DNA from: Prasinococcaceae sp. CCMP 1430
Lineage: Eukaryota > Plantae > Prasinodermophyta
Assembly (NCBI GenBank): GCA_013416795.1
Contig: RQSC01000034.1
Span: forward strand, 1-18,108
Length of the DNA stretch: 18,108 nt
Reading direction: 5' to 3'
Positions 1 to 13,508 of this stretch are shown piece by piece (the stretch's first letter is position 1; the number at the start of each line of letters is the position of its first letter). A model generated the notes under the pieces. The model ran no database searches. It was not told the origin of the DNA and saw only the letters and a program-made list of their open reading frames with translations. A program made the position numbers and the translations under genes.

Positions 1-36
<36 letters not shown>
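1..36. repeat. Poly-G run (G36) at the window edge
   Basis: 36 consecutive G at 1-36. It could be a real homopolymer or a sequencing/contig-end artefact. Confidence 0.9.
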
Positions 37-1496: not shown

Positions 1497-1715
1497 CATG
1501 TGCGTCATTTTGAGATCGCGAGGCCGCGTGCCGCAGTCGCCCCAAGAAAGCAGGAGCGGCGCGCGCGACCGAGGGCCGCTCTCGCACGCGCCTCGCGCGG
1601 CGGGCGTGGCGGCGCGCGCGTCGAGGGAGGAAGATACACTGCGGTGTTGTTTATGTGTGACCTATCGCGAGGCGTCTCTTGTTAAAATGAAGGTTCTGCC
1701 TGAATCGCGAGCCGC

Positions 1716-2312
1716 TTACAGCGAGATCGAGGTCCAGTACTCGGTGGCGTACTTCATCGAGTTGACGTGGACGGGGTCGGCGACGTGCGCGGACCAGTTG
1801 GCGATGGGGCCCTCCTTGGTCCACACGGCCTGCGAGATGCAGCCGAGCCACGCGAACATGGCGAGGCGGCAGTGCTTGAGCTCCTTGAGCTTCAGCTCGT
1901 CGAGGTCGCCCGACTCGGCGAGGTTGAGGGGGTCGAAGCGGCCGCCCGGGTTGGCGTCGCCCACGGTGAGCTCGTCGAACGCCGGGTCGGTGAGGCCGGT
2001 GCGGTACGCCTCGGCCAGGCCCATGGTGACGATCTCAATGCCGATCACCGCCCAGAACGAGGGGTAGCCGGAGCCCTCCGGCGCGAGCGGGGCGATGGCG
2101 CCCGGGAACTTGTCCGCGATGGCGGTGCAGTCGTCGGGGGTGCACAGGGCGCCCGCCTCGAACCAGGGGATGCCGGTGCCGTTCTCCGAGGCCCACGCGC
2201 CGGTCACGCCGAGCATGGCGAAGCGGCCGTGGATGATCTCGCGCTCGGCGTTCTTCTCGTTGCCGAAGGGGATCAGGGGCGACTCGCCCGCGCCGGGGTA
2301 GGTGCCGAACTC
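1716..2312 (-). CDS. LHCP: Prasinophyte light-harvesting chlorophyll a/b protein, copy 1 (main exon; exon 1 not visible, probably in gap 2679-3294)
   Basis: EREIIHGRFAMLG (helix B), CTPDDC, AEAYR (helix C) and ELKHCRLAM (helix A), typical of Mantoniella/Ostreococcus Lhcp. TTGCAG acceptor ends at 2313, GCTGAC branch at 2353-2348, TAA at 1718-1716. Confidence 0.95.
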   Translation of the reverse strand, partial: EFGTYPGAGESPLIPFGNEKNAEREIIHGRFAMLGVTGAWASENGTGIPWFEAGALCTPDDCTAIADKFPGAIAPLAPEGSGYPSFWAVIGIEIVTMGLAEAYRTGLTDPAFDELTVGDANPGGRFDPLNLAESGDLDELKLKELKHCRLAMFAWLGCISQAVWTKEGPIANWSAHVADPVHVNSMKYATEYWTSISL

Positions 2313-2678
2313 CTGCAATTGCGGCGGTCGCGCGGGCGGCGAAGCGTGTCAGCCAACGCGCTCGAGCTCGGGAGGGCGCGGCGGGCGCGACACCGCGCTG
2401 GCGCCGCGAATCGAGCGGTCCAGGGCGCGCGCGGGCGCTGCGATCGCATGGCTCCCATCCCCGATCCCCGATGCGCAGCCCGCGCCGGAAATTCGCGCCC
2501 CTCCCACCAGGCTCCCCGCCGGCGCTTGGGAGCCGCGCGGACAAGCAGCAGGGCAGCCGTGCCCGGCGCGCGCTCGCGCGCGCGCGCCCAATTTCTCGCC
2601 GAGGCCTTTGGTCGCCGCCGAGGCGCACGCGTCGAGCGCGGTCCCTCGGGCTCGCTGCCCTCGGCGCGCGCGCGCCGT

Positions 2679-3294
2679 NNNNNNNNNNNNNNNNNNNNNN
2701 NNNNNNNNNNNNNNNNNNNNNNNNNNNNNNNNNNNNNNNNNNNNNNNNNNNNNNNNNNNNNNNNNNNNNNNNNNNNNNNNNNNNNNNNNNNNNNNNNNNN
2801 NNNNNNNNNNNNNNNNNNNNNNNNNNNNNNNNNNNNNNNNNNNNNNNNNNNNNNNNNNNNNNNNNNNNNNNNNNNNNNNNNNNNNNNNNNNNNNNNNNNN
2901 NNNNNNNNNNNNNNNNNNNNNNNNNNNNNNNNNNNNNNNNNNNNNNNNNNNNNNNNNNNNNNNNNNNNNNNNNNNNNNNNNNNNNNNNNNNNNNNNNNNN
3001 NNNNNNNNNNNNNNNNNNNNNNNNNNNNNNNNNNNNNNNNNNNNNNNNNNNNNNNNNNNNNNNNNNNNNNNNNNNNNNNNNNNNNNNNNNNNNNNNNNNN
3101 NNNNNNNNNNNNNNNNNNNNNNNNNNNNNNNNNNNNNNNNNNNNNNNNNNNNNNNNNNNNNNNNNNNNNNNNNNNNNNNNNNNNNNNNNNNNNNNNNNNN
3201 NNNNNNNNNNNNNNNNNNNNNNNNNNNNNNNNNNNNNNNNNNNNNNNNNNNNNNNNNNNNNNNNNNNNNNNNNNNNNNNNNNNNNNNNNNNNNN
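2679..3294. other. Assembly gap (616 N)
   Basis: Run of N. Confidence 1.
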
Positions 3295-3925
3295 GGCCGC
3301 GCGCCGGGCGAAGGGGCGCGGCGCAGGCGAGGAGGACCCGCGCGTCGTTGCCCGTTGGCCGTCACTGCCCCCCGCCGCGGGGGTCACGGGCGCCTCACCG
3401 CCGGGCGACGGGGACTGCGAAAACTGGGAGAGGGCCACGAGGCGATGGCAGAATGTCCACAGCTTGTGTGGAGTTGGGATGGTCACGTGGTCGGTGCAGG
3501 GTCCTACGGAGCGCGTGCAGCTGAGCGTGCTCTGCCTTGGCCGCCTCGGCGCGCCGCCCTGGCCGCCTGCGTCGCCGTGCGACGCGACAGTCGTGCTCCG
3601 TGGCGCGGCTGGCTGCTCCCACGGCTCGCTCCCGCGGCTCGGCGCGCTGCGAGCGATGCTGGGTCGCGCCTCGACGCGCCCGGCTGCAAGGCCCGCGTCA
3701 CGGCCTGTGCACACCCACACCTTGCTGTCGCAACGGATCGAGACACTGGCATCGCTTGGCCCACGCCCGCGCGCCCGCACACGCGCGGCGTGGACGCGGG
3801 TCTCCGAGGCGATACACAAGTTGTTATGCGTTCAGACCTATCGCGCGGTCGCTATCGGGCGGCAGCATGTAAAATCGGTCCTCGGCACAAACACCGAACG
3901 CCCCGGGCGCCGGAGTGCGAGCCGC

Positions 3926-4522
3926 TTAGAGCGAGATCGAGGTCCAGTACTCGGTGGCGTACTTCATCGAGTTGACGTGGACGGGGTCGGCGACGTGCGC
4001 GGACCAGTTGGCGATGGGGCCCTCCTTGGTCCACACGGCCTGCGAGATGCAGCCGAGCCACGCGAACATGGCGAGGCGGCAGTGCTTGAGCTCCTTGAGC
4101 TTCAGCTCGTCGAGGTCGCCCGACTCGGCGAGGTTGAGGGGGTCGAAGCGGCCGCCCGGGTTGGCGTCGCCCACGGTGAGCTCGTCGAACGCCGGGTCGG
4201 TGAGGCCGGTGCGGTACGCCTCGGCCAGGCCCATGGTGACGATCTCAATGCCGATCACCGCCCAGAACGAGGGGTAGCCGGAGCCCTCCGGCGCGAGCGG
4301 GGCGATGGCGCCCGGGAACTTGTCCGCGATGGCAGTGCAGTCGTCGGGCGAGCAGAGCGCGCCGGCCTCGAACCAGGGGATGCCGGTGCCGTTCTCCGAG
4401 GCCCACGCGCCGGTCACGCCGAGCATGGCGAAGCGGCCGTGGATGATCTCGCGCTCGGCGTTCTTCTCGTTGCCGAAGGGGATCAGGGGCGACTCGCCCG
4501 CGCCGGGGTAGGTGCCGAACTC
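3926..4522 (-). CDS. LHCP: Lhcp copy 2 (main exon; 5' part in gap)
   Basis: Tandem duplicate of copy 1 at offset 2210 bp, with 7 nucleotide differences and one amino-acid change (CTPDDC to CSPDDC). GCAG acceptor abuts the gap; TAA at 3928-3926. Confidence 0.95.
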   Translation of the reverse strand, partial: EFGTYPGAGESPLIPFGNEKNAEREIIHGRFAMLGVTGAWASENGTGIPWFEAGALCSPDDCTAIADKFPGAIAPLAPEGSGYPSFWAVIGIEIVTMGLAEAYRTGLTDPAFDELTVGDANPGGRFDPLNLAESGDLDELKLKELKHCRLAMFAWLGCISQAVWTKEGPIANWSAHVADPVHVNSMKYATEYWTSISL

Positions 4523-4526
4523 CTGC

Positions 4527-5349
4527 NNNNNNNNNNNNNNNNNNNNNNNNNNNNNNNNNNNNNNNNNNNNNNNNNNNNNNNNNNNNNNNNNNNNNNNNNN
4601 NNNNNNNNNNNNNNNNNNNNNNNNNNNNNNNNNNNNNNNNNNNNNNNNNNNNNNNNNNNNNNNNNNNNNNNNNNNNNNNNNNNNNNNNNNNNNNNNNNNN
4701 NNNNNNNNNNNNNNNNNNNNNNNNNNNNNNNNNNNNNNNNNNNNNNNNNNNNNNNNNNNNNNNNNNNNNNNNNNNNNNNNNNNNNNNNNNNNNNNNNNNN
4801 NNNNNNNNNNNNNNNNNNNNNNNNNNNNNNNNNNNNNNNNNNNNNNNNNNNNNNNNNNNNNNNNNNNNNNNNNNNNNNNNNNNNNNNNNNNNNNNNNNNN
4901 NNNNNNNNNNNNNNNNNNNNNNNNNNNNNNNNNNNNNNNNNNNNNNNNNNNNNNNNNNNNNNNNNNNNNNNNNNNNNNNNNNNNNNNNNNNNNNNNNNNN
5001 NNNNNNNNNNNNNNNNNNNNNNNNNNNNNNNNNNNNNNNNNNNNNNNNNNNNNNNNNNNNNNNNNNNNNNNNNNNNNNNNNNNNNNNNNNNNNNNNNNNN
5101 NNNNNNNNNNNNNNNNNNNNNNNNNNNNNNNNNNNNNNNNNNNNNNNNNNNNNNNNNNNNNNNNNNNNNNNNNNNNNNNNNNNNNNNNNNNNNNNNNNNN
5201 NNNNNNNNNNNNNNNNNNNNNNNNNNNNNNNNNNNNNNNNNNNNNNNNNNNNNNNNNNNNNNNNNNNNNNNNNNNNNNNNNNNNNNNNNNNNNNNNNNNN
5301 NNNNNNNNNNNNNNNNNNNNNNNNNNNNNNNNNNNNNNNNNNNNNNNNN
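4527..5349. other. Assembly gap (823 N)
   Basis: Run of N between the divergent Lhcp copies 2 and 3. Confidence 1.
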
Positions 5350-5395
5350 CGAGCGGCGGGGCCGCACGCGCGCGCCGGCGCGAAATCGCGTGCGC

Positions 5396-5560
5396 GCGTG
5401 CGTGTGCGTGCGCGTGTGCGTGTGCGAGTGCGTGTGTGTACGCCTGTGCGTGTGTGTGTGTGCGTGTGTGTGTACGCCGGTGTGTGAAGCAGTGTGTGTG
5501 TGTGTGACTGCGTGTGTGACTGTGTGTGTGTGCATGTGCGTGTGCGCGTGTGCGTGCGCG
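5396..5560. repeat. Degenerate (GT)n/(GTGC)n microsatellite, probably inside the Lhcp copy 3 first intron
   Basis: Long interrupted gtgtgt/gcgtgt tract. Confidence 0.85.
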
Positions 5561-5986
5561 CGCGCGCCCCGCCGCGCAGCCCACGCATGCGCATGGGGAT
5601 CCTGCACGGATCCCTCTGACGTGCATTAGGGTATACACATTTGAGGGTCTGTATACACGCGCGAGGGGAGGTCTTTTCGCAAGCGGCGGCGGCGGCGGCG
5701 GGTTGGGGTTGGCGCGCGCCGCGGCGCCCCCCCCCCCCCCGGCCGCGCGCGCCTCATCCTCATCGCCTTATCGCCAACACGCGCGGAACCGCGGTTCGCG
5801 CGCGCTTTCGCCGTCCGCGAAGTCGACGCGTTCGCAGGCGATCCCGGGCGCGAGGCGGGCGGGCGGCGCGAGGCTGGGGCGCGGCGGTGGGCGCCTCGCG
5901 ATCGCTGGGGTGCGCGCGGCGCTGACACGACGCGCGCCCCTTCCCACATCTCCCTCTCCCCCGACCGACCTCCCGTGCCACCGCAG

Positions 5987-6571
5987 GAGCCGGGCACCTA
6001 CCCGGGCGGCGATGGCGAGACCATCATCCCCTTCACCGACGAGAAGAACGCCGAGCGCGAGATCATCCACGGCCGCTTCGCCATGCTCGGCGTGACCGGC
6101 GCGTGGGCCTCGGAGAACGGCACCGGCATCCCCTGGTTCGAGGCGGGCGCCCTGTCGTGGGGGCTGCTGACGTGGCGGATCGCGGACAAGTTCCCGGGCG
6201 CCATCGCCCCGCTCGCGCCGGAGGGCTCGGGCTACCCCTCGTACTGGCTGGTGATCGCCGTTGAGATCGCGGCCATGGGCGGCGCCGAGGCCTACCGCAC
6301 CGGCCTCGTCGACCCCGCGTTCGACGAGCTCACCGTGGGCGACGCCAACCCGGGCGGCCGCTTCGACCCCCTCAGCCTGGCCGAGTCGGGCGACCTCGAC
6401 GAGCTCAAGCTCAAGGAGCTCAAGCACTGCCGCCTCGCCATGGGCGCGTGGTTCGGCTGCATCTGGCAGGCGATCGCCACCGGCGAGGGCCCCATCGCCA
6501 ACTGGCGCGCGCACGTTGCGGACCCCGTCCACAACAACCTGATCTCCGCCCAGTACGCCCCGTGGCTGTAA
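5987..6571 (+). CDS. LHCP: Lhcp copy 3, divergent paralogue (main exon; exon 1 not visible)
   Basis: Same LHC helix motifs with different N- and C-termini (EPGTYPGGDGETIIPFTD...YAPWL). GCTGAC branch at 5921-5926, pyrimidine tract ~5937-5975, CGCAG acceptor ends at 5986, TAA at 6569-6571. Carries the anomalous block at 6156-6178. Confidence 0.95.
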   Translation, partial: EPGTYPGGDGETIIPFTDEKNAEREIIHGRFAMLGVTGAWASENGTGIPWFEAGALSWGLLTWRIADKFPGAIAPLAPEGSGYPSYWLVIAVEIAAMGGAEAYRTGLVDPAFDELTVGDANPGGRFDPLSLAESGDLDELKLKELKHCRLAMGAWFGCIWQAIATGEGPIANWRAHVADPVHNNLISAQYAPWL

Positions 6572-6712
6572 ATTTTGCGAACGCAGTATAACTTCTTGAT
6601 CCGCCCCGTCCCTGCGCTCCCCTCTTGAGCACCCGCACACCCAGCAGGTGCTCTCTGGCGTGCGCGGCGCGTGCGTGCGTGCGCACGAAGGAGCGCCCAG
6701 TCTTTTACCTCA

Positions 6713-8045
6713 TCACGCCCCGAGCATGCGCGGGACTGTAGCGCACTCATCGCGCCAAGCGTTACGGCGGCCTTTGCTGTGGCTGTTGAGCACGTCCTTG
6801 AGCACCGCGCGCGTTCCGTCGGGCAGCGCGCCGTCGGCACACAGGCATGCAATCGCCATGTCGCGTGGCGTGCGCGCGCTCGGGGAGGTAGAATCGGCAG
6901 AGCCGTTGTCTGCGGATGACTCAAACGTCGTGTCCGCTGGCTCCGCCTCGAGCACTTCCTGGGCGAGCCCCGCGGGCGCCGCGAGCACGCTGGCCGGCCC
7001 GAACATGGCCGCCACGCTGACCCACGCACCCGCCGGCAGTCGCAGCATCTCAAGGGTCGACAGGGTGGGCGCGACCGCCTCAGGAGGTAGGGCCCCCACC
7101 ATGTGGCATGCCTGTGCGGGCGGGCACGCGCGCGTGCGCGCGAAGGCCGCGCGAGCGTCAGCCCTGGGCCCCGGACGCACGCGCACACGCTCCAGAGCGC
7201 CCGCACGCGAGCAAACGCACGCCGCACCTCAATGTTCGGCTGGGCACCCTTCCCATCGGCGCTGTGAGCAACGAGCACTGCGCCGTGGGCTTGGGCGATC
7301 GTCAGCGGGGCGCGAAGCGGCGCACGCGACGCGCGCACCGCCTTGCCGCCAAGGCCGTGCAACGAGAGACCGTCGGCGCCGTCCATGGGCATCTGCTCGA
7401 ATCGGCGACTGTGGCGCACGCGCATGTGCGATTGCGCATGGCGGTGTCAGCGCGCACGCGCGCGCGCTTCCGCGTGCGCGCGCCGGTGTGCGCGCGTAAA
7501 GACGTGCGTGCTGCACACCTACGAGGGCGTACGGTGCGCGCGTGCTCACTCACGCGCGCGTGTTTGAGCGCCCTCTCACCTCTCCCCGCCCTTGCCGTCC
7601 TCCATCGCCTGCGCGCGCTTTGCCATGCGCTTCGCTGCCCCACCGGACGCACCGGCGGCGCCCGCGCGCAGCTCCTCCGTTGCAGGTGCGTTGGCGGTGG
7701 CTATGTGCGTTCGAGTACCGCGCGTGCACGCGCGCGCGAGCATGCGCGCGTCAGGATGGGCGCGCAAAAGGCGCTTGTGCATGCGCGAGCGCACTCGGGT
7801 GTGTGCGAGCGAGCTGCATGGCACGGTGTCCGCTCGCACGCACCCTTGGCGGCGCTCTCGCGTGCGCGGTCCCTGGCCGCGTTCACGACGCCGCCCTGCT
7901 GCGGCTTCGCACGCTTGTGCGCTTGCGTGCTGCTGAGCAGCGCCAGCCCCGCGACCACGAAGACCAGCGCGCACACGAGCACCACGCGCTCGCGCATCGA
8001 GAGGTGTACGAAGTCGCGGCTGGGGCGGCGGCGGGTGCGCGCCAT
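6713..8045 (-). CDS. Uncharacterised 300-aa type II membrane protein; 4 exons 8045-7844, 7700-7580, 7408-7228, 7111-6713
   Basis: ATG at 8045, then a basic stretch and one TM segment (VVLVCALVFVVAGLALLSS). Three GT-AG introns (143, 171, 116 bp) with donors GTGCGT/GTGAGA/GTGCGG, a CTGAC branch in each and matching phases 1, 2, 0. Exons total 903 bp and end in tandem TGA TGA. Confidence 0.7.
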
Positions 8046-8331
8046 GGTGCGCGGGGGCGTGGGTTCGGGCGCTCGCGCGCACGGGTGACCGTCTCGAGGC
8101 GCGCACACGTGCGCGCGCGCGCGCGCGCGCGTGTGTGGCGCGCGAATTCGCGCGCACGCCCCGCCTCACCTCACCCCGGTTTGATCCGGATAGACCCTGG
8201 TCATTATGGACGCTCGCGGCGATGTGCCCGGGTCTTTGCTGGGATCGCGCCTGCGCACACCCGGTCAATGCGCGGCAGTTTCGGGCTGGCCGCGGCGGCG
8301 GTGTAGTGCGAAAATATCTGACATTCTGCGG

Positions 8332-8384
8332 CGCGAGGTCGAAACGCATGCGCGGGCGGGCCGCGAGGTCGAAACGCATGCGCG
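8332..8384. repeat. Direct repeat, 2 x 23 bp CGCGAGGTCGAAACGCATGCGCG, period 30
   Basis: Identical units at 8332-8354 and 8362-8384. Confidence 0.9.
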
Positions 8385-8429
8385 CGGAGGCCGGGCGGCG
8401 GTTCGCCGCGCGAGGGCTCCTCGCGGTCG

Positions 8430-8769
8430 TGCCTCGAGCAGCACGGCCGCCACGTGGTCGAAGGGGCCGCCATGACGATGGGCGAGGGGATCGAGCCGTC
8501 GTGGCTGCACCTCGAAGCCTCGGCGGCGACGTCGCGCCACCACAATCTCCATAATCAGCACGAGCTGATTGGAATGCTCGCGCGAACACTGGCCGCCGGC
8601 GGCCTCCCTGGCCGCCTGCCTCGCCTCGGCGGCGCTCGGCCGCCACTCGCCCTCCCAGGCGAGCAGCGGCCGCGGCCGCGGCGACCGCTGCGCCCAGTAG
8701 TCGACGCAAGCGCGCGATTGGTGGGACTGCGGGGCCACCTTGAGGGTGGCCCCGCAGTGCTGCGCGCGC
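8430..8769. other. Possible coding exon of undetermined strand
   Basis: The open frames 8454-8864(+) and 8265-8738(-) share one codon register with GC-rich positions 1 and 3. The + option has gccgccATG at 8472 and a GTGCG donor at 8770; the - option has a GCTGAC at 8782-8777 and a CAG at 8762-8760. Confidence 0.25.
8726..8758. repeat. Perfect 14-bp inverted repeat with a 5-nt loop
   Basis: ACTGCGGGGCCACC (8726-8739), TTGAG, GGTGGCCCCGCAGT (8745-8758). Confidence 0.9.
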
Positions 8770-8797
8770 GTGCGCGGTCAGCCGACGACAAGCGCGC

Positions 8798-8805
8798 GCG
8801 CGAAA
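8798..8805 (-). promoter_or_regulatory. E2F-like site TTTCGCGC upstream of RAD5
   Basis: Matches the TTTSSCGC consensus and lies near an AT-richer patch (8815-8880). The motif is short and also occurs elsewhere in the window (5378-5385). Confidence 0.2.
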
Positions 8806-8968
8806 GCTCCCACGTCCGAATTTCGCTCGAATTTCAGGGGAAAATCCCAAAATTCCCCGGATAGTTTCGGTCGTCTTCCCGCTCACGCTGGCGCTCGCTG
8901 GCGCTGGCTGGCGCGGCGCGCGCGCGGCCGGCGAGGCTCGAGCGCTTCGCGCGGCCCGGAATTCGCGC

Positions 8969-9894
8969 NNNNNNNNNNNNNNNNNNNNNNNNNNNNNNNN
9001 NNNNNNNNNNNNNNNNNNNNNNNNNNNNNNNNNNNNNNNNNNNNNNNNNNNNNNNNNNNNNNNNNNNNNNNNNNNNNNNNNNNNNNNNNNNNNNNNNNNN
9101 NNNNNNNNNNNNNNNNNNNNNNNNNNNNNNNNNNNNNNNNNNNNNNNNNNNNNNNNNNNNNNNNNNNNNNNNNNNNNNNNNNNNNNNNNNNNNNNNNNNN
9201 NNNNNNNNNNNNNNNNNNNNNNNNNNNNNNNNNNNNNNNNNNNNNNNNNNNNNNNNNNNNNNNNNNNNNNNNNNNNNNNNNNNNNNNNNNNNNNNNNNNN
9301 NNNNNNNNNNNNNNNNNNNNNNNNNNNNNNNNNNNNNNNNNNNNNNNNNNNNNNNNNNNNNNNNNNNNNNNNNNNNNNNNNNNNNNNNNNNNNNNNNNNN
9401 NNNNNNNNNNNNNNNNNNNNNNNNNNNNNNNNNNNNNNNNNNNNNNNNNNNNNNNNNNNNNNNNNNNNNNNNNNNNNNNNNNNNNNNNNNNNNNNNNNNN
9501 NNNNNNNNNNNNNNNNNNNNNNNNNNNNNNNNNNNNNNNNNNNNNNNNNNNNNNNNNNNNNNNNNNNNNNNNNNNNNNNNNNNNNNNNNNNNNNNNNNNN
9601 NNNNNNNNNNNNNNNNNNNNNNNNNNNNNNNNNNNNNNNNNNNNNNNNNNNNNNNNNNNNNNNNNNNNNNNNNNNNNNNNNNNNNNNNNNNNNNNNNNNN
9701 NNNNNNNNNNNNNNNNNNNNNNNNNNNNNNNNNNNNNNNNNNNNNNNNNNNNNNNNNNNNNNNNNNNNNNNNNNNNNNNNNNNNNNNNNNNNNNNNNNNN
9801 NNNNNNNNNNNNNNNNNNNNNNNNNNNNNNNNNNNNNNNNNNNNNNNNNNNNNNNNNNNNNNNNNNNNNNNNNNNNNNNNNNNNNNNNNNNNNN
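8969..9894. other. Assembly gap (926 N)
   Basis: Run of N; probably contains the RAD5 start. Confidence 1.
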
Positions 9895-12800
9895 CGTCGC
9901 CCTGGCCGCCGCACGGCCGCGGCGGCGTGCGCCTCGGGCGGTGGGTCGTGCGCGCGACCTCCACCACGAAGGGCCGCGGGTACCTGCGCGCGGGAGACCC
10001 CGTGACGCTGCGCTTCCCCGACCCGCCGCCGCAAGCCGGCGCGGGCGCCAAGGCTTCCAAAGGGGCGGGCAAGGGCAAGGGCAAGGGCAAGGGCAAGGGC
10101 GGCGCCCTGCCGAGGAAACGCATGGAGATCATCCGCTTCGCGAACAGGGGCGGGTACGAGGTGGGCCGCCTCCCGGGCGACGCGCGGCCGCTCATCGCGC
10201 TGCACGACGCGGGGCACGTGGCGGTGCGGGCGACGGCGCTCGAATGCACCGAGCCCCTCGAGATCATGGCGACCATCACGCTCGTGATCGAGGTCTCGGG
10301 CACGCCCAAGCTCTTCCGCGAGGCGGCCGCGTGCTCGGCGGCCACGGCGGGGCCGTCGGGCGGGGTGTTTGGCGGCGGCGGCGCGGGCGCGGGCGCCATG
10401 CCCAGCGCCAGCTCCTCCATCAACGTGCAGAAGGCGCCCATCACGAGGGTGCTCGAGCTGTGCGGCCTGCGCCCCTCCGCGAAGGCCGACTTCACGCCGG
10501 AGGCCTTCGAGGCACAGCGCAAGCGCGCGCTCGACGCGGCCGCCGCCGCGTCGCCGCTGCCGCCGCCGAAGCGCGCGTCGCCGCAGCACCCGGCGCTGCC
10601 AGCCCCTGCCGACGTCGCAGGGGGCGACGCCCTCGAGGAGGCGCACGCCCGCGAGGCGCGCGCCGACGCAGAGATCCAGCACGCGGCCATGGCGTCGCTC
10701 AGCCGGAGCAAGGAGCTCGAGGGGCGCGCGCTGCCTCGCGCGGAGCAGCCCGCCGACATGTGCTCCCCGCTGCGCGGCTACCAGCTGCAGGCGCTGCACT
10801 TCATGCTGGGGCGCGAGCAGGGAGAGGAGTGCGCCGACAAGCTGCACCCCTCCTGGGAGGAGTACACGGTGGGAGACGACGTGGGGACGGGCGGCGGCGG
10901 CCCCACGCGCTTCTATCACAACGTCTTCACGGGGGAGTGCTCGCTCGAGTTTCAGTCGGCCACGCGCGCCACGCGCGGGGGCATCCTCGCGGACTCGATG
11001 GGCCTGGGCAAGACCGTGGAGACCATCGCGCTGCTGGTGGCGGCGAGGCCCCCGCCGGCCAAGGAGCGGAGGGAGGCGCTGGCGGCCGAGCTCGCCAGGC
11101 CCCAGGCCGCCGCGGCGCCCGCGGCAATCAAGAGCCCGCTCAACTCGATGTTCGCGAAGGCCGCCGACGCGAGCGGCGCCGCCAGGCCCAAGCCCGCGCA
11201 GGTGCGCTTCGGCGGCACGCTGGTGGTGTGCCCCATGTCGCTGCTCGGGCAGTGGCGCGACGAGATCGAGCGGCACGTCCGCGGCGGCGCGCTGCGCGTC
11301 GTGGTGTACTACGGGAGCGATCGCAACACCAAGGGCGCGGGCGTTCGCGCGCTCATCGATGCCGACGTGGTCCTCACCACGTTCGGCGTGCTCGGCTCGG
11401 AGCTGAAGGGGGGCGTCGGCGGCGGAAGCGATGGGGGCGCGCAGCCGGGCGAAGCGCCGGCGAGCGACGGCGCCGCTGCCTGGCCGCCGCCGCGCAGCGG
11501 GCCGCTCTTGCATGTGCGCTGGTGGCGGGTGGTCCTGGACGAGGCGCACTCGATCAAGGGGCGGGGCACCGTGTCGCAGCGCGCCGCCTGCGCGCTGGCC
11601 GCCGAGCGGCGGTGGTGTCTGACGGGCACGCCCATACAGAACTCGCTCGAGGACCTGTACTCGCTGCTCAAGTTCCTGCGAGTGGAGCCGTGGTGCCACT
11701 GGGGCTGGTGGAGCCGCCTCATCCAGGCGCCGAACGAGGCTGGGGACACGCGCGCCTTGCACCTGCTGCGCGGCCTGCTGGTGCCGCTCGCGCTGCGGCG
11801 CACGAAGGACACGCTGGGGGCGGACGGCGCACCCATCCTGTCGTTGCCGCCAGCCGACGTGCAACTGCTCGAGCTGGAACCCACGCCCGAGGAGCGCGAC
11901 TTCTACCAGGCGCTCTACAAGCGCTCCAAGACCGAGTTCGACACCTTCGTCGAGCAGGGGCGCGTGCTGCACGAGTACGCGCACGTGCTCGAGCTGCTGC
12001 TGCGCCTGCGACAGTGCTGCAACCACCCTTTCCTGGTCATGTCGCGCGCGGACACCGCCAATGCCCTCGGCAAGGTGGCCAAGGCGTTCATGGGCAACAA
12101 GTCCAAACACGTGCCCCCGCCCCCGCCCAACGTGCCGGCACAGGAGCGACGGGAAAGGCAGGCGGAGGAGCGGCCGCAGCGGCCGGAGCCGTCGAGGGGG
12201 CAGGGCCAGGACGACGCGTCGGCCAACGGGCGGCGGCGCAGCGGCGGAGGGGGTGCCGCGCGTGCGCCTACGCCCGGCACCCGCCGGTCGACTAGGCGCA
12301 CCAGCACTGGCCGCTACGCCACGCGCGCATCACTCGATGCCGACGGAGGCGACGCCGCCGCTTCTCAGGGCGACGAGCATCGCGACGTCTCGCAGGCCGA
12401 GCGCGGCGCCGGCGCTGGCAGCGACAGGGACAGCGACAAGGCCAACGACAGGGACAGCGACTTCGACGTGCGCGTGGAGGAGAGCGATGGCGCCTCCGAG
12501 GGGGACGGATCCGGTGGCTCGGACTCCGACTTCGTCCCGGGCGGTGGCGCCAAGGGTAAGGGGTCTAATAAGAACCGACGCGGCAGCAGCGGCGGGGGAA
12601 CGAGCCGTGGCGGGGCGGCCCGAGGAGCTAGCGCGCCCGGGTCTGCTGACGGCGAGGAGGGCGCCTGCGCCGGCCCGACGTCCGCCTACGCCGTCGAGGT
12701 GGTGAAGGAGATCCAGGCGGCGCTGGCAGAGGGCAAGCCGTACGATTGTCCGATCTGCATGGACACCGCCGACGACCCTGTGATCACGCCGTGCGCGCAC

Positions 12801-13508
12801 GTCACCTGCCGCGAGTGCCTGCTGCAGTACTGGGCGTCGCAGCGCGGCACGGGCGGGGCGCGGCCCAAGGGCGGCTCGTGCCCCACATGCCGCGCGGAGG
12901 TGGCCTCGTCTGAGCTCATGGCCGCGCCCACGGGCAGTCGCTTTCGCGTGGACATAGAGGGCCAGTGGCGCTCCTCGGCCAAAGTGACCGCGCTCTTCGA
13001 GGAGCTGTCCACGCTCGGGTCTGAGAAGGCGGTGGTGTTCTCGCAGTGGACGTCATTCCTCGACCTGCTCGAGGTGGCGTTCAGGCGAGACGAGCGCGCG
13101 CCGCGAGGCGTGCGCCTTGCGCGCCTCGACGGCGGCGTGGTCCAGGCGCGGCGCGAGGCCCTGCTGCGCGACTTCGCGGAGGCCGACGGACCCAACGTGC
13201 TGCTCATCAGCCTCAAGGCCGGCGGGACGGGGCTCAACCTGACCTCAGCCACGCGCTGCTACCTGATGGACCCGTGGTGGAACCCGGCCGTGGAGGATCA
13301 GGCCATCCACCGGCTGCACCGCGTGGGCCAGACCCGGCCGGTGCGCGTGCGGCGGCTCGTGGTGCGCGACAGCGTCGAGCGGCGCATGCTCGACGTGCAG
13401 GCGCGCAAGGGCGCCATCGTCGACGGCGCGCTCAACGCCGCCGCGAGGGACGGCGACCGCGACGCGCGCGCCAGGCGCATAGAGGAGCTCAAGAGCCTCT
13501 TCCGATGA
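9895..13508 (+). CDS. RAD5: RAD5/RAD5A-like DNA repair protein (HIRAN, SNF2 ATPase, RING, helicase C); 5' partial
   Basis: HIRAN-like STTKGR...IIRF...EVGRLP; SNF2 motifs GGILADSMGLGKT, RVVLDEAH, WCLTGTPIQN, LRLRQCCNHP; RING CPICMD...PCAH..C..C...CPTCR; helicase C motifs VVFSQW, LISLKAGGTGLNLT, DPWWNPAVEDQAIHRLHRVGQ. The frame is open from the gap to TGA at 13506-13508. Confidence 0.95.
10071..10100 (+). repeat. (AAGGGC)5 coding repeat, giving KG x5 in a HIRAN loop
   Basis: Five perfect hexamers. Confidence 0.9.

What the first reader, a model, noticed from the sequence alone, without database searches (positions are those of the whole stretch)
6156..6178. 23-nt block in Lhcp copy 3 is the exact complement, without reversal, of its homologue
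Seen: the copy 1 coding strand reads CTG T[GCACCCCCGACGACTGCACCGCC]ATC; copy 3 reads CTG T[CGTGGGGGCTGCTGACGTGGCGG]ATC. All 23 bases are A<->T / C<->G swapped in the same order; equivalently, the block is the letter-by-letter mirror of + strand 2121-2143. Flanks are identical for over 100 bp upstream and 50 bp downstream, and the frame is kept. The conserved CTPDDCTA becomes SWGLLTWR, losing both Cys. A true inversion would give GGCGGTGCAGTCGTCGGGGGTGC, which is not observed. Known: template switching and recombination give reverse complements; strand polarity rules out complement-only copies. Inference: most likely a computational artefact or deliberate edit; if present in the DNA it would be an unexplained mutational process.
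Basis: partly seen in the sequence, partly recalled or inferred. Interest (0 to 1): 0.85.

Follow-up and report, generated by a model that had tools for sequence, protein, structure and literature searches.

The report
Complemented 23-base block: sequence-record artefact
A 23-base stretch in one light-harvesting (Lhcp) gene copy is written as the letter-by-letter complement of the correct sequence; independent assemblies of the same locus carry the normal sequence, so this is an error in the sequence record, not biology.

Summary
Window 6156-6178 (CGTGGGGGCTGCTGACGTGGCGG) is the position-by-position complement of the copy-1 coding strand, which equals the letter-wise reverse of + strand 2121-2143. 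It is flanked by 117 nt and 50 nt of perfect identity to copy 1, and the reading frame stays open (CTPDDCTA becomes SWGLLTWR).

It is not chance, and it is not an inversion.

The window is a gapped draft assembly of Prasinoderma coloniale or a very close relative. Two Tara Oceans metagenome scaffolds are collinear with window 5981-8144 and about 99% identical outside the block. At exactly this position they carry GCACCCCCGACGACTGCACCGCC.

- All 12 environmental Lhcp loci fetched have the normal strand sense.
- So does the published P. coloniale protein PRCOL_00003081.
- All 118 homologues in which the loop motif could be located keep both cysteines.

So copy 3's own sequence was complemented in place.

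The block lies where the assembly appears to mix paralogue variants. N gaps border the region of the three gene copies, and the window starts with a 36-G run.

Unchecked notes from this scan report many similar in-place complemented blocks on other pieces of the same genome, so the scan has met this before.

Verdict: a strand-handling artefact of the record. About 0.62 that it arose in the assembly pipeline, about 0.33 that it is a later edit or corruption, about 0.01-0.02 that it is real DNA.

The parts
6156..6178 (+). The 23-nt block written as the letter-wise complement (no reversal) of the correct coding sequence. It turns the conserved loop motif CTPDDCTA into SWGLLTWR without breaking the frame.
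   Evidence: The orthologous Tara scaffolds L001:716-738 and L002:624-646 are its exact complement at the collinear position.
5987..6571 (+). Lhcp copy 3, exon 2 (194 codons plus stop; splice acceptor ...ccgcag|gag at 5986/5987). Exon 1 was not found in the window.
   Evidence: Best database hit is P0001 (EukProt PRCOL_00003081-RA), identical to it except for S42A and the 8 residues of the block. PF00504 is precomputed for the hits. 7yca_P scores E = 4e-101 with P0001.
1716..2312 (-). Lhcp copy 1, exon 2. Its bases 2121-2143 are the homologous block in normal sense.
3926..4522 (-). Lhcp copy 2, exon 2. It is a 2210-bp tandem copy of copy 1 and runs up to the N gap. The homologous block at 4331-4353 is in normal sense with 3 differences (CSPDDCTA type).
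2124..2154 (-). The six positions that distinguish copy 1 from copy 2 within exon 2 (2124, 2139, 2141, 2145, 2148, 2154, equivalent to copy-3 positions 6175, 6160, 6158, 6154, 6151, 6145). At all six, copy 1 carries the bases of the copy-3 orthologue. This cluster overlaps the position homologous to the block.
6110..6112 (+). Codon TCG (Ser) in copy 3. It is the copy-1/2 type. The Tara orthologues read GCC (Ala), and P0001 and P0124 also have Ala here.
2679..3294 (.). N gap (616 nt) upstream of copy 1.
4527..5349 (.). N gap (823 nt) between the heads of copy 2 and copy 3.
1..36 (+). Run of 36 G at the start of the window. It looks like a poly-G short-read artefact at a contig end (inference).

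Best explanation
The block is not a property of the organism's DNA. It is an in-place, letter-wise complement of copy 3's own 23 bases, and it most likely arose from a strand-handling error in the pipeline that built this gapped draft assembly of Prasinoderma coloniale (or a very close relative). Shown: the orthologous locus in independent assemblies has the normal sequence. Shown: the block lies within a 190-nt stretch (6039-6228) that would be identical between the inverted paralogues copy 1 and copy 3 but for the block, at the cluster of variants that distinguishes the paralogues. Inferred mechanism: a piece stored in the orientation of copy 1's + strand had to be written out reverse-complemented for copy 3 and was only reversed. 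An equivalent route is a consensus or polishing step that complemented bases taken from reverse-strand reads which were already in reference orientation. Either error yields exactly this result: correct length, correct register, intact flanks, and every base swapped for its complement.
For: (1) Exact 23/23 complement with intact flanks of 117 and 50 nt. (2) L001 and L002 are Tara metagenome scaffolds from two samples. They are collinear with window 5981-8144, including the downstream 326-codon ORF. They differ from the window by scattered single substitutions (18 for L001; 23 plus one 2-nt insertion for L002) outside the block, and they carry GCACCCCCGACGACTGCACCGCC at the block position. (3) All 12 environmental Lhcp loci, each from a different ENA metagenome assembly record, have the normal strand sense. 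(4) P0001, the published P. coloniale model from a PacBio assembly (PMC7455551), matches copy 3 at 185 of 186 residues outside the block and has CTPDDCTA. (5) All 118 homologues in which the loop motif was located keep both Cys, and none of the proteins held at that point contains SWGLLTWR. (6) Assembly context: three N gaps, exon 1 not found for any of the three Lhcp copies, a 36-G run at the start, copy 1 carrying copy-3-type bases at the six sites that separate it from copy 2, and copy 3 carrying a copy-1/2-type codon at 6110-6112. (7) About 5.4 kb of the window that has a near-identical environmental counterpart shows no other clustered differences. (8) Leads I did not check: other first-stage notes on this genome report many in-place complemented blocks of 37 to 143 nt and of 900 nt, with 55 nt and about 126 nt recurring, some flanking a repeat copy on both sides. 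That pattern points to a systematic pipeline error.
Against: I could not reach the raw reads or the deposited record, so presence of the block in the public assembly is not shown. The software step is inferred, and I found no published description of such a bug. The comparison sequences are environmental relatives about 99% identical and a protein model from another assembly, not reads from the same DNA preparation. The recurrence across the genome rests on unchecked AI notes. P0001 may be a paralogue elsewhere in the genome rather than this locus, because its exon 1 is not in the window.
Confidence: 0.62

Rival explanations
1. The block was introduced after assembly, either as a deliberate edit (for example a spiked-in control anomaly) or as accidental corruption of the copy of the record that was scanned. 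The deposited assembly would then be normal at this site.
For: An in-place complement of a clean block, in frame and with untouched flanks, is what a simple scripted edit would produce. None of the protein hits was marked as window-encoded, so the record's own annotation could not be compared. The published assembly is described as 22 PacBio chromosomes with no gaps mentioned, unlike this gapped window of a genome with at least 184 pieces, so the provenance of the record is unclear.
Against: According to unchecked notes, the same genome holds dozens of such blocks, with recurrent lengths (55 nt, about 126 nt) and pairs flanking repeat copies. That looks more like assembly-graph or overlap handling than arbitrary editing. 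The block also sits exactly at a cluster of paralogue variants where the assembly appears to mix copies, a place an assembler would stumble and an editor would be unlikely to choose.
Confidence: 0.33
2. The block is really in the genome. An unknown mutational or repair process copied 23 nt in parallel-complement sense, or 23 adjacent complementing transversions accumulated, leaving copy 3 with a disrupted lumenal loop.
For: The frame stays open and nothing in the window directly contradicts it. No reads were available to exclude it.
Against: Known templated DNA synthesis is antiparallel, so I know of no process that yields a complement without reversal (established knowledge). Twenty-three adjacent substitutions that are all the complementing transversion have a chance of about (1/3)^23 even if all 23 sites mutated. 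The rest of the locus differs from the orthologues at only about 1% of sites. The orthologous locus in two environmental samples and the species' published protein are normal. Both cysteines are kept in all 118 homologues in which the motif was located.
Confidence: 0.015
3. A genuine inversion, or template switching or gene conversion between the inverted paralogues copy 1 and copy 3.
For: Copy 1 and copy 3 are inverted repeats 4 kb apart with long identical tracts. The variant pattern around the block could reflect real gene conversion.
Against: An inversion would give GGCGGTGCAGTCGTCGGGGGTGC at 6156, which is not there. Gene conversion between inverted copies reproduces the coding sequence unchanged. 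The block is not a mirror palindrome, so complement and reverse complement cannot coincide.
Confidence: 0.005

Closest known systems
Strand-handling errors in sequence records (sequence reversed but not complemented, or complemented but not reversed, by software or by hand)
   Same: The result is a letter-wise complement or mirror of the true sequence, with correct length and register. Antiparallel DNA synthesis cannot produce it. It is absent from independent data for the same locus.
   Different: Here only a 23-nt internal block of a scaffold is affected, not a whole entry. According to unchecked notes, it is one of many such blocks in the same assembly. I found no published description of an assembler or polisher bug with this signature.
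Short inversions and template-switch mutations between inverted repeats
   Same: It occurs inside an inverted paralogue pair with long identical flanks, and the length is preserved.
   Different: Those processes give the reverse complement. The observed block is the complement only.
Prasinophyte-type light-harvesting protein Lhcp (Ostreococcus tauri PSI-LHCI-Lhcp structure, PDB 7YCA chains P and Q)
   Same: The gene that carries the block is a typical Lhcp. P0001 scores E = 4e-101 against 7yca_P, which also has CTPDDCTA in the loop after the first membrane helix.
   Different: As written, the window's copy 3 lacks the C-x-P-D-D-C loop motif that all located homologues keep.
Paralogue collapse or chimeric threading in short-read assemblies of tandem gene families
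   Same: Near-identical Lhcp copies lie among N gaps. Copy 1 carries copy-3-type variants and copy 3 carries a copy-1/2-type codon.
   Different: Ordinary collapse mixes real variants in the correct strand sense and does not complement a block. The variant pattern could also be real gene conversion.

Membership tests
Inversion or template-switch product | The altered segment equals the reverse complement of the original or donor segment. | tested here: not met
   The expected GGCGGTGCAGTCGTCGGGGGTGC is absent at 6156-6178. The observed string is the complement only.
Gene conversion between inverted paralogues | The converted tract is identical to the donor when both are read in coding sense. 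| tested here: not met
   Read in coding sense, 23 of 23 bases differ from copy 1, while the flanks are identical.
Record-level artefact (in-place complement) | The block is the exact complement of the locus's own orthologous sequence, at the collinear position, with unchanged flanks. | tested here: met
   L001:716-738 and L002:624-646 match the complement-only window at 6156-6178 with 100% identity, inside a collinear alignment of about 2.17 kb.
Record-level artefact (in-place complement) | The block is absent from independent sequence data of the same or closely related organisms. | tested here: met
   None of the 12 environmental Lhcp loci carries it. P0001 and P0124 from the published P. 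coloniale annotation have CTPDDCTA. No protein held at that point contains SWGLLTWR. The JGI metagenome scans found neither version, so they are uninformative.
Record-level artefact (in-place complement) | The block is absent from the raw reads of the sequenced strain. | not testable with these tools
   No read archive is reachable. An exact look-up of the neighbouring 326-aa ORF found no other assembly of the same strain.
Record-level artefact (in-place complement) | The same signature recurs elsewhere in the same assembly (systematic cause). | tested here: inconclusive
   Many first-stage notes on other pieces of this genome report it, but I could not read those pieces. Within this window no second block was found, either by self-comparison or against about 5.4 kb of orthologous DNA.
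Lhcp (prasinophyte-specific chlorophyll a/b-binding protein, PF00504) | Chlorophyll a/b-binding domain with high similarity to known Lhcp proteins. | tested here: met
   Copy 3 exon 2 hits Lhcp proteins down to E = 3e-120, and PF00504 is precomputed for all listed hits. P0001 against 7yca_P gives E = 4e-101.
Lhcp (prasinophyte-specific chlorophyll a/b-binding protein, PF00504) | Conserved C-x-P-x-x-C loop motif (CTPDDCTA in most members). | tested here: not met
   As written, copy 3 reads SWGLLTWR. All 118 homologues in which the motif was located keep both Cys. The failure is attributed to the artefact.

The most novel reading that the evidence does not exclude
The complemented block is physically present in the alga's DNA, and the similar blocks reported elsewhere in this genome are too. 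That would reveal a process able to write a DNA segment in parallel-complement sense, which no known polymerase or repair pathway does.
Probability: 0.01. Interest if true: 0.95.

Novelty: not a real feature. Interest (0 to 1): 0.1.

Why it matters
This finding adds nothing to the biology. Its value is practical. If the block, and the many similar blocks reported by other notes on this genome, are in the public record, then this assembly contains silent, frame-preserving corruptions. They change conserved protein motifs without producing stops or frameshifts, so they would pass routine quality checks and spread into gene models, alignments and selection analyses. Other anomalies reported from this genome (odd motifs, seemingly encrypted segments, false stops) should be read with this in mind. 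If the block was spiked in or arose in a local copy, the result shows that such a change can be recognised and traced with orthologous metagenome contigs.

Tried and rejected
1. Chance. Rejected: no match in 200 shuffles, and the two control letter-swap maps give no hits.

2. True inversion, template switch or gene conversion. Rejected on the sequence itself.

3. Colour-space or 2-bit XOR decoding error, which would also produce blocks under the A<->C/G<->T and A<->G/C<->T maps. No such blocks were found against the paralogues or the orthologous loci. This is a small sample, so it gives no support but is not excluded genome-wide.

4. Duplicated or mirrored sequence at the edges of the N gaps. 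Only matches of 8-12 nt were found, at chance level.

5. Scans of JGI metagenome contigs for the complemented 29-mer and then the normal 29-mer. Both returned zero, so the collection lacks this gene version and the negative result says nothing.

6. Exact look-up of the neighbouring 326-aa ORF, to find another assembly of the same strain. It is not on record.

7. Search for exon 1 peptides (MATTMM, TFGG, YPE... and others) in six frames, to decide whether PRCOL_00003081 sits at this locus. None was found, so the exon 1 sequences are missing or lie in the gaps.

8. Literature search for a described "complement without reversal" assembly bug. Nothing relevant was found.

Full report
**Observation**

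The + strand at 6156-6178 reads CGTGGGGGCTGCTGACGTGGCGG. The + strand at 2121-2143 reads GGCGGTGCAGTCGTCGGGGGTGC. A script confirmed that the second string reversed letter by letter equals the first, and that the copy-1 coding strand is GCACCCCCGACGACTGCACCGCC. Every one of the 23 bases of copy 3 is therefore the Watson-Crick partner of the copy-1 coding base at the same position, in the same order.

Read in coding sense, copy 3 and copy 1 are identical over 6039-6155 (117 nt) and 6179-6228 (50 nt). Bases 6155 and 6179 are unchanged, so the block is exactly 23 nt. The frame is preserved: copy 3 reads GAL-SWGLLTWR-IADKF and copy 1 reads GAL-CTPDDCTA-IADKF.

The block string occurs once in the window, and none of 200 dinucleotide-preserving shuffles gave a match. 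The normal string occurs in copy 1, and with 3 mismatches in copy 2. An inversion would have produced the 2121-2143 string at 6156, and it is not there.

As controls, I applied the other two pairwise letter swaps (A<->C/G<->T and A<->G/C<->T). They give no matches between the window and itself or any fetched locus. The complement map gives this block at the collinear position, plus low-complexity self-mirror hits.

**Surroundings**

- The window is about 70% G+C and contains three N runs: 2679-3294, 4527-5349 and 8969-9894.
- It holds three exon-2 copies of a prasinophyte-type light-harvesting gene.
  - Copy 1 is on the - strand at 1716-2312.
  - Copy 2 is on the - strand at 3926-4522, is a 2210-bp tandem copy of copy 1, and runs up to a gap.
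  - Copy 3 is on the + strand at 5987-6571.
- No exon 1 peptide was found in any frame.
- The window starts with 36 G.

**Source organism**

The best protein hit to copy 3 is EukProt PRCOL_00003081-RA of Prasinoderma coloniale (P0001). It is identical to copy 3 at 185 of 186 residues outside the block, and it carries CTPDDCTA.

Residues 28-72 of a second published model, PRCOL_00006298-RA (P0124), are a 45/45 translation match to the non-coding stretch just upstream of copy 3, 5855-5989.

The source is therefore P. coloniale or a very close relative. The published genome, however, is described as a PacBio/NextDenovo assembly of 22 chromosomes with no gaps mentioned (PMC7455551). The scanned genome has N gaps and at least 184 pieces. 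I could not establish the provenance of the record.

**Independent sequence of the same locus**

Cluster members of P0001 led to Tara Oceans metagenome scaffolds.

- L001 (sample record ERZ28654376) and L002 (ERZ28654407) are collinear with window 5981-8144. That stretch covers copy 3, its 3' flank and the downstream 326-codon ORF.
- Outside the block they differ from the window only by scattered single substitutions: 18 for L001, and 23 plus one 2-nt insertion for L002, in about 2.14 kb.
- At the block position both read GCACCCCCGACGACTGCACCGCC.
- Against a complement-only copy of the window, L001:716-738 and L002:624-646 match 6156-6178 at 100% identity.

So the block is the in-place complement of copy 3's own orthologous sequence. 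It is not something imported from copy 1.

Ten further environmental Lhcp loci (L005-L013 and L007), each from a different ENA metagenome assembly record, all have the normal strand sense. All 118 homologues in which the loop motif could be located keep both cysteines. CTPDDCTA is by far the commonest form, and no protein held at that point contains SWGLLTWR. The solved Ostreococcus Lhcp (7yca_P) also has CTPDDCTA.

A second stretch of the window, the RAD5/HLTF-like gene, could be compared with Tara scaffold L003. It shows 19 scattered single differences in 3259 nt and no blocks.

**Context that points to assembly trouble**

Within exon 2, copy 1 and copy 2 are 100% identical except at six positions. 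These correspond to copy-3 coordinates 6145, 6151, 6154, 6158, 6160 and 6175. At all six, copy 1 carries the bases of the copy-3 orthologue.

Conversely, copy 3 carries the copy-1/2-type codon TCG at 6110-6112. The Tara orthologues read GCC there, and both published models have Ala.

In the environmental loci, Ser at that codon goes with the TCG-CCC form of the block, and Ala goes with the ACC or ACG form. The window's copy 1 shows a combination not seen among the sequences I examined.

Either real gene conversion or cross-threading of paralogue variants during assembly could explain this. In both cases the complemented block lies inside that cluster of variants, within a 190-nt stretch (6039-6228) that would be identical between two inverted paralogues but for the block. 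A graph- or mapping-based tool handles pieces in both orientations at exactly such a place.

**Recurrence (leads, not checked by me)**

The scan's notes for this genome list many first-reader reports of the same signature on other pieces.

- Reported block lengths are 37, 55 (several), 66, 87, 102, about 126 (recurring), 143 and 900 nt.
- Some lie in single-copy conserved genes (eIF5B, a SUMO protease, EHD).
- One report describes two 55-nt blocks flanking a repeat copy.
- One describes an Lhcp exon 1 that "switches mid-codon into its own complement".
- Other notes suspect systematic mis-assembly.

If these reports hold, the cause is systematic. Recurrent lengths and placement at repeat edges look more like overlap or k-mer handling in an assembly, gap-closing or polishing step than like arbitrary editing.

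**Explanation and odds**

Shown:
- The block is exact.
- It is not chance and not an inversion.
- The orthologous locus elsewhere, and the species' published protein, are normal.
- The change hits a motif kept in every located homologue while the rest of the gene is intact.

Inferred: a strand-handling error. One route is a piece stored in copy-1 + strand orientation that was reversed but not complemented when written for copy 3. Another is a consensus step that complemented bases from reverse-strand reads already given in reference orientation.

My estimates are as follows.
- About 0.62 that the error arose in the assembly pipeline and is in the record.
- About 0.33 that it was introduced later, as a deliberate control edit or as corruption of the scanned copy.
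- About 0.015 that it is real DNA.
- About 0.005 for inversion or gene conversion, which the sequence itself already rules out.

A real origin would need a process that writes DNA in parallel-complement sense, which antiparallel templated synthesis cannot do (established knowledge). The alternative is 23 adjacent complementing transversions, at about (1/3)^23, in a locus that otherwise differs from its orthologues at about 1% of sites.

**What could not be done**

- An exact look-up of the neighbouring ORF found no other same-strain assembly.
- The JGI metagenome collection contains neither version of the 29-mer, so it is uninformative.
- No paper describing such a bug was found.

**Verdict**

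This is not a real biological feature. Its interest lies only in quality control of this assembly.

Noticed in passing
window 1-36: The window starts with a run of 36 G followed by TTGGGG. It looks like a poly-G read artefact at a contig end, which would fit a short-read draft assembly.
   Followed up: no
window 1707-2316 and 3917-4526: Copy 1 and copy 2 form a 2210-bp tandem duplicate. Within exon 2 they are 100% identical except for six SNPs inside 31 nt. At all six, copy 1 matches the copy-3 orthologue. This is either a short gene-conversion tract from an inverted paralogue or cross-threading of paralogue variants by the assembler.
   Followed up: partly
window 6110-6112: Copy 3 has TCG (Ser), like copies 1 and 2. 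The two Tara orthologues read GCC, and the published P. coloniale models P0001 and P0124 have Ala.
   Followed up: partly
window 8144 onward; L001:2705-4438: Collinearity with the Tara scaffolds stops at a G+C-rich simple repeat near 8100-8144. The WW-domain gene that follows in L001 and L002 has no counterpart in window 8145-8968, which runs into an N gap. This is either a real rearrangement or a misjoin.
   Followed up: partly
window 5855-5989: The published gene model PRCOL_00006298-RA (P0124) has an N-terminal part (residues 28-72) that is a 45/45 translation of this stretch upstream of the exon-2 splice acceptor, together with a read-through C-terminus. The model looks mis-annotated, and a paralogous locus shares this upstream sequence.
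   Followed up: partly
window 9927-13505 (+): A RAD5/HLTF-like ORF (HIRAN, SNF2, RING and Helicase_C domains) starts just after the N gap, so its 5' end may be missing. It is 99.4% identical at the DNA level to Tara scaffold L003.
   Followed up: partly
window 5387-5567: A long imperfect (GT/GC)n simple repeat lies between the gap and copy 3. It behaves as a mirror repeat in the complement-only comparison (low complexity, not an anomaly).
   Followed up: no
window 2313-2678, 4523-4526, 5350-5986: No exon 1 (transit-peptide exon) was found for any of the three Lhcp copies. The expected upstream sequence is either inside the N gaps or absent.
   Followed up: partly
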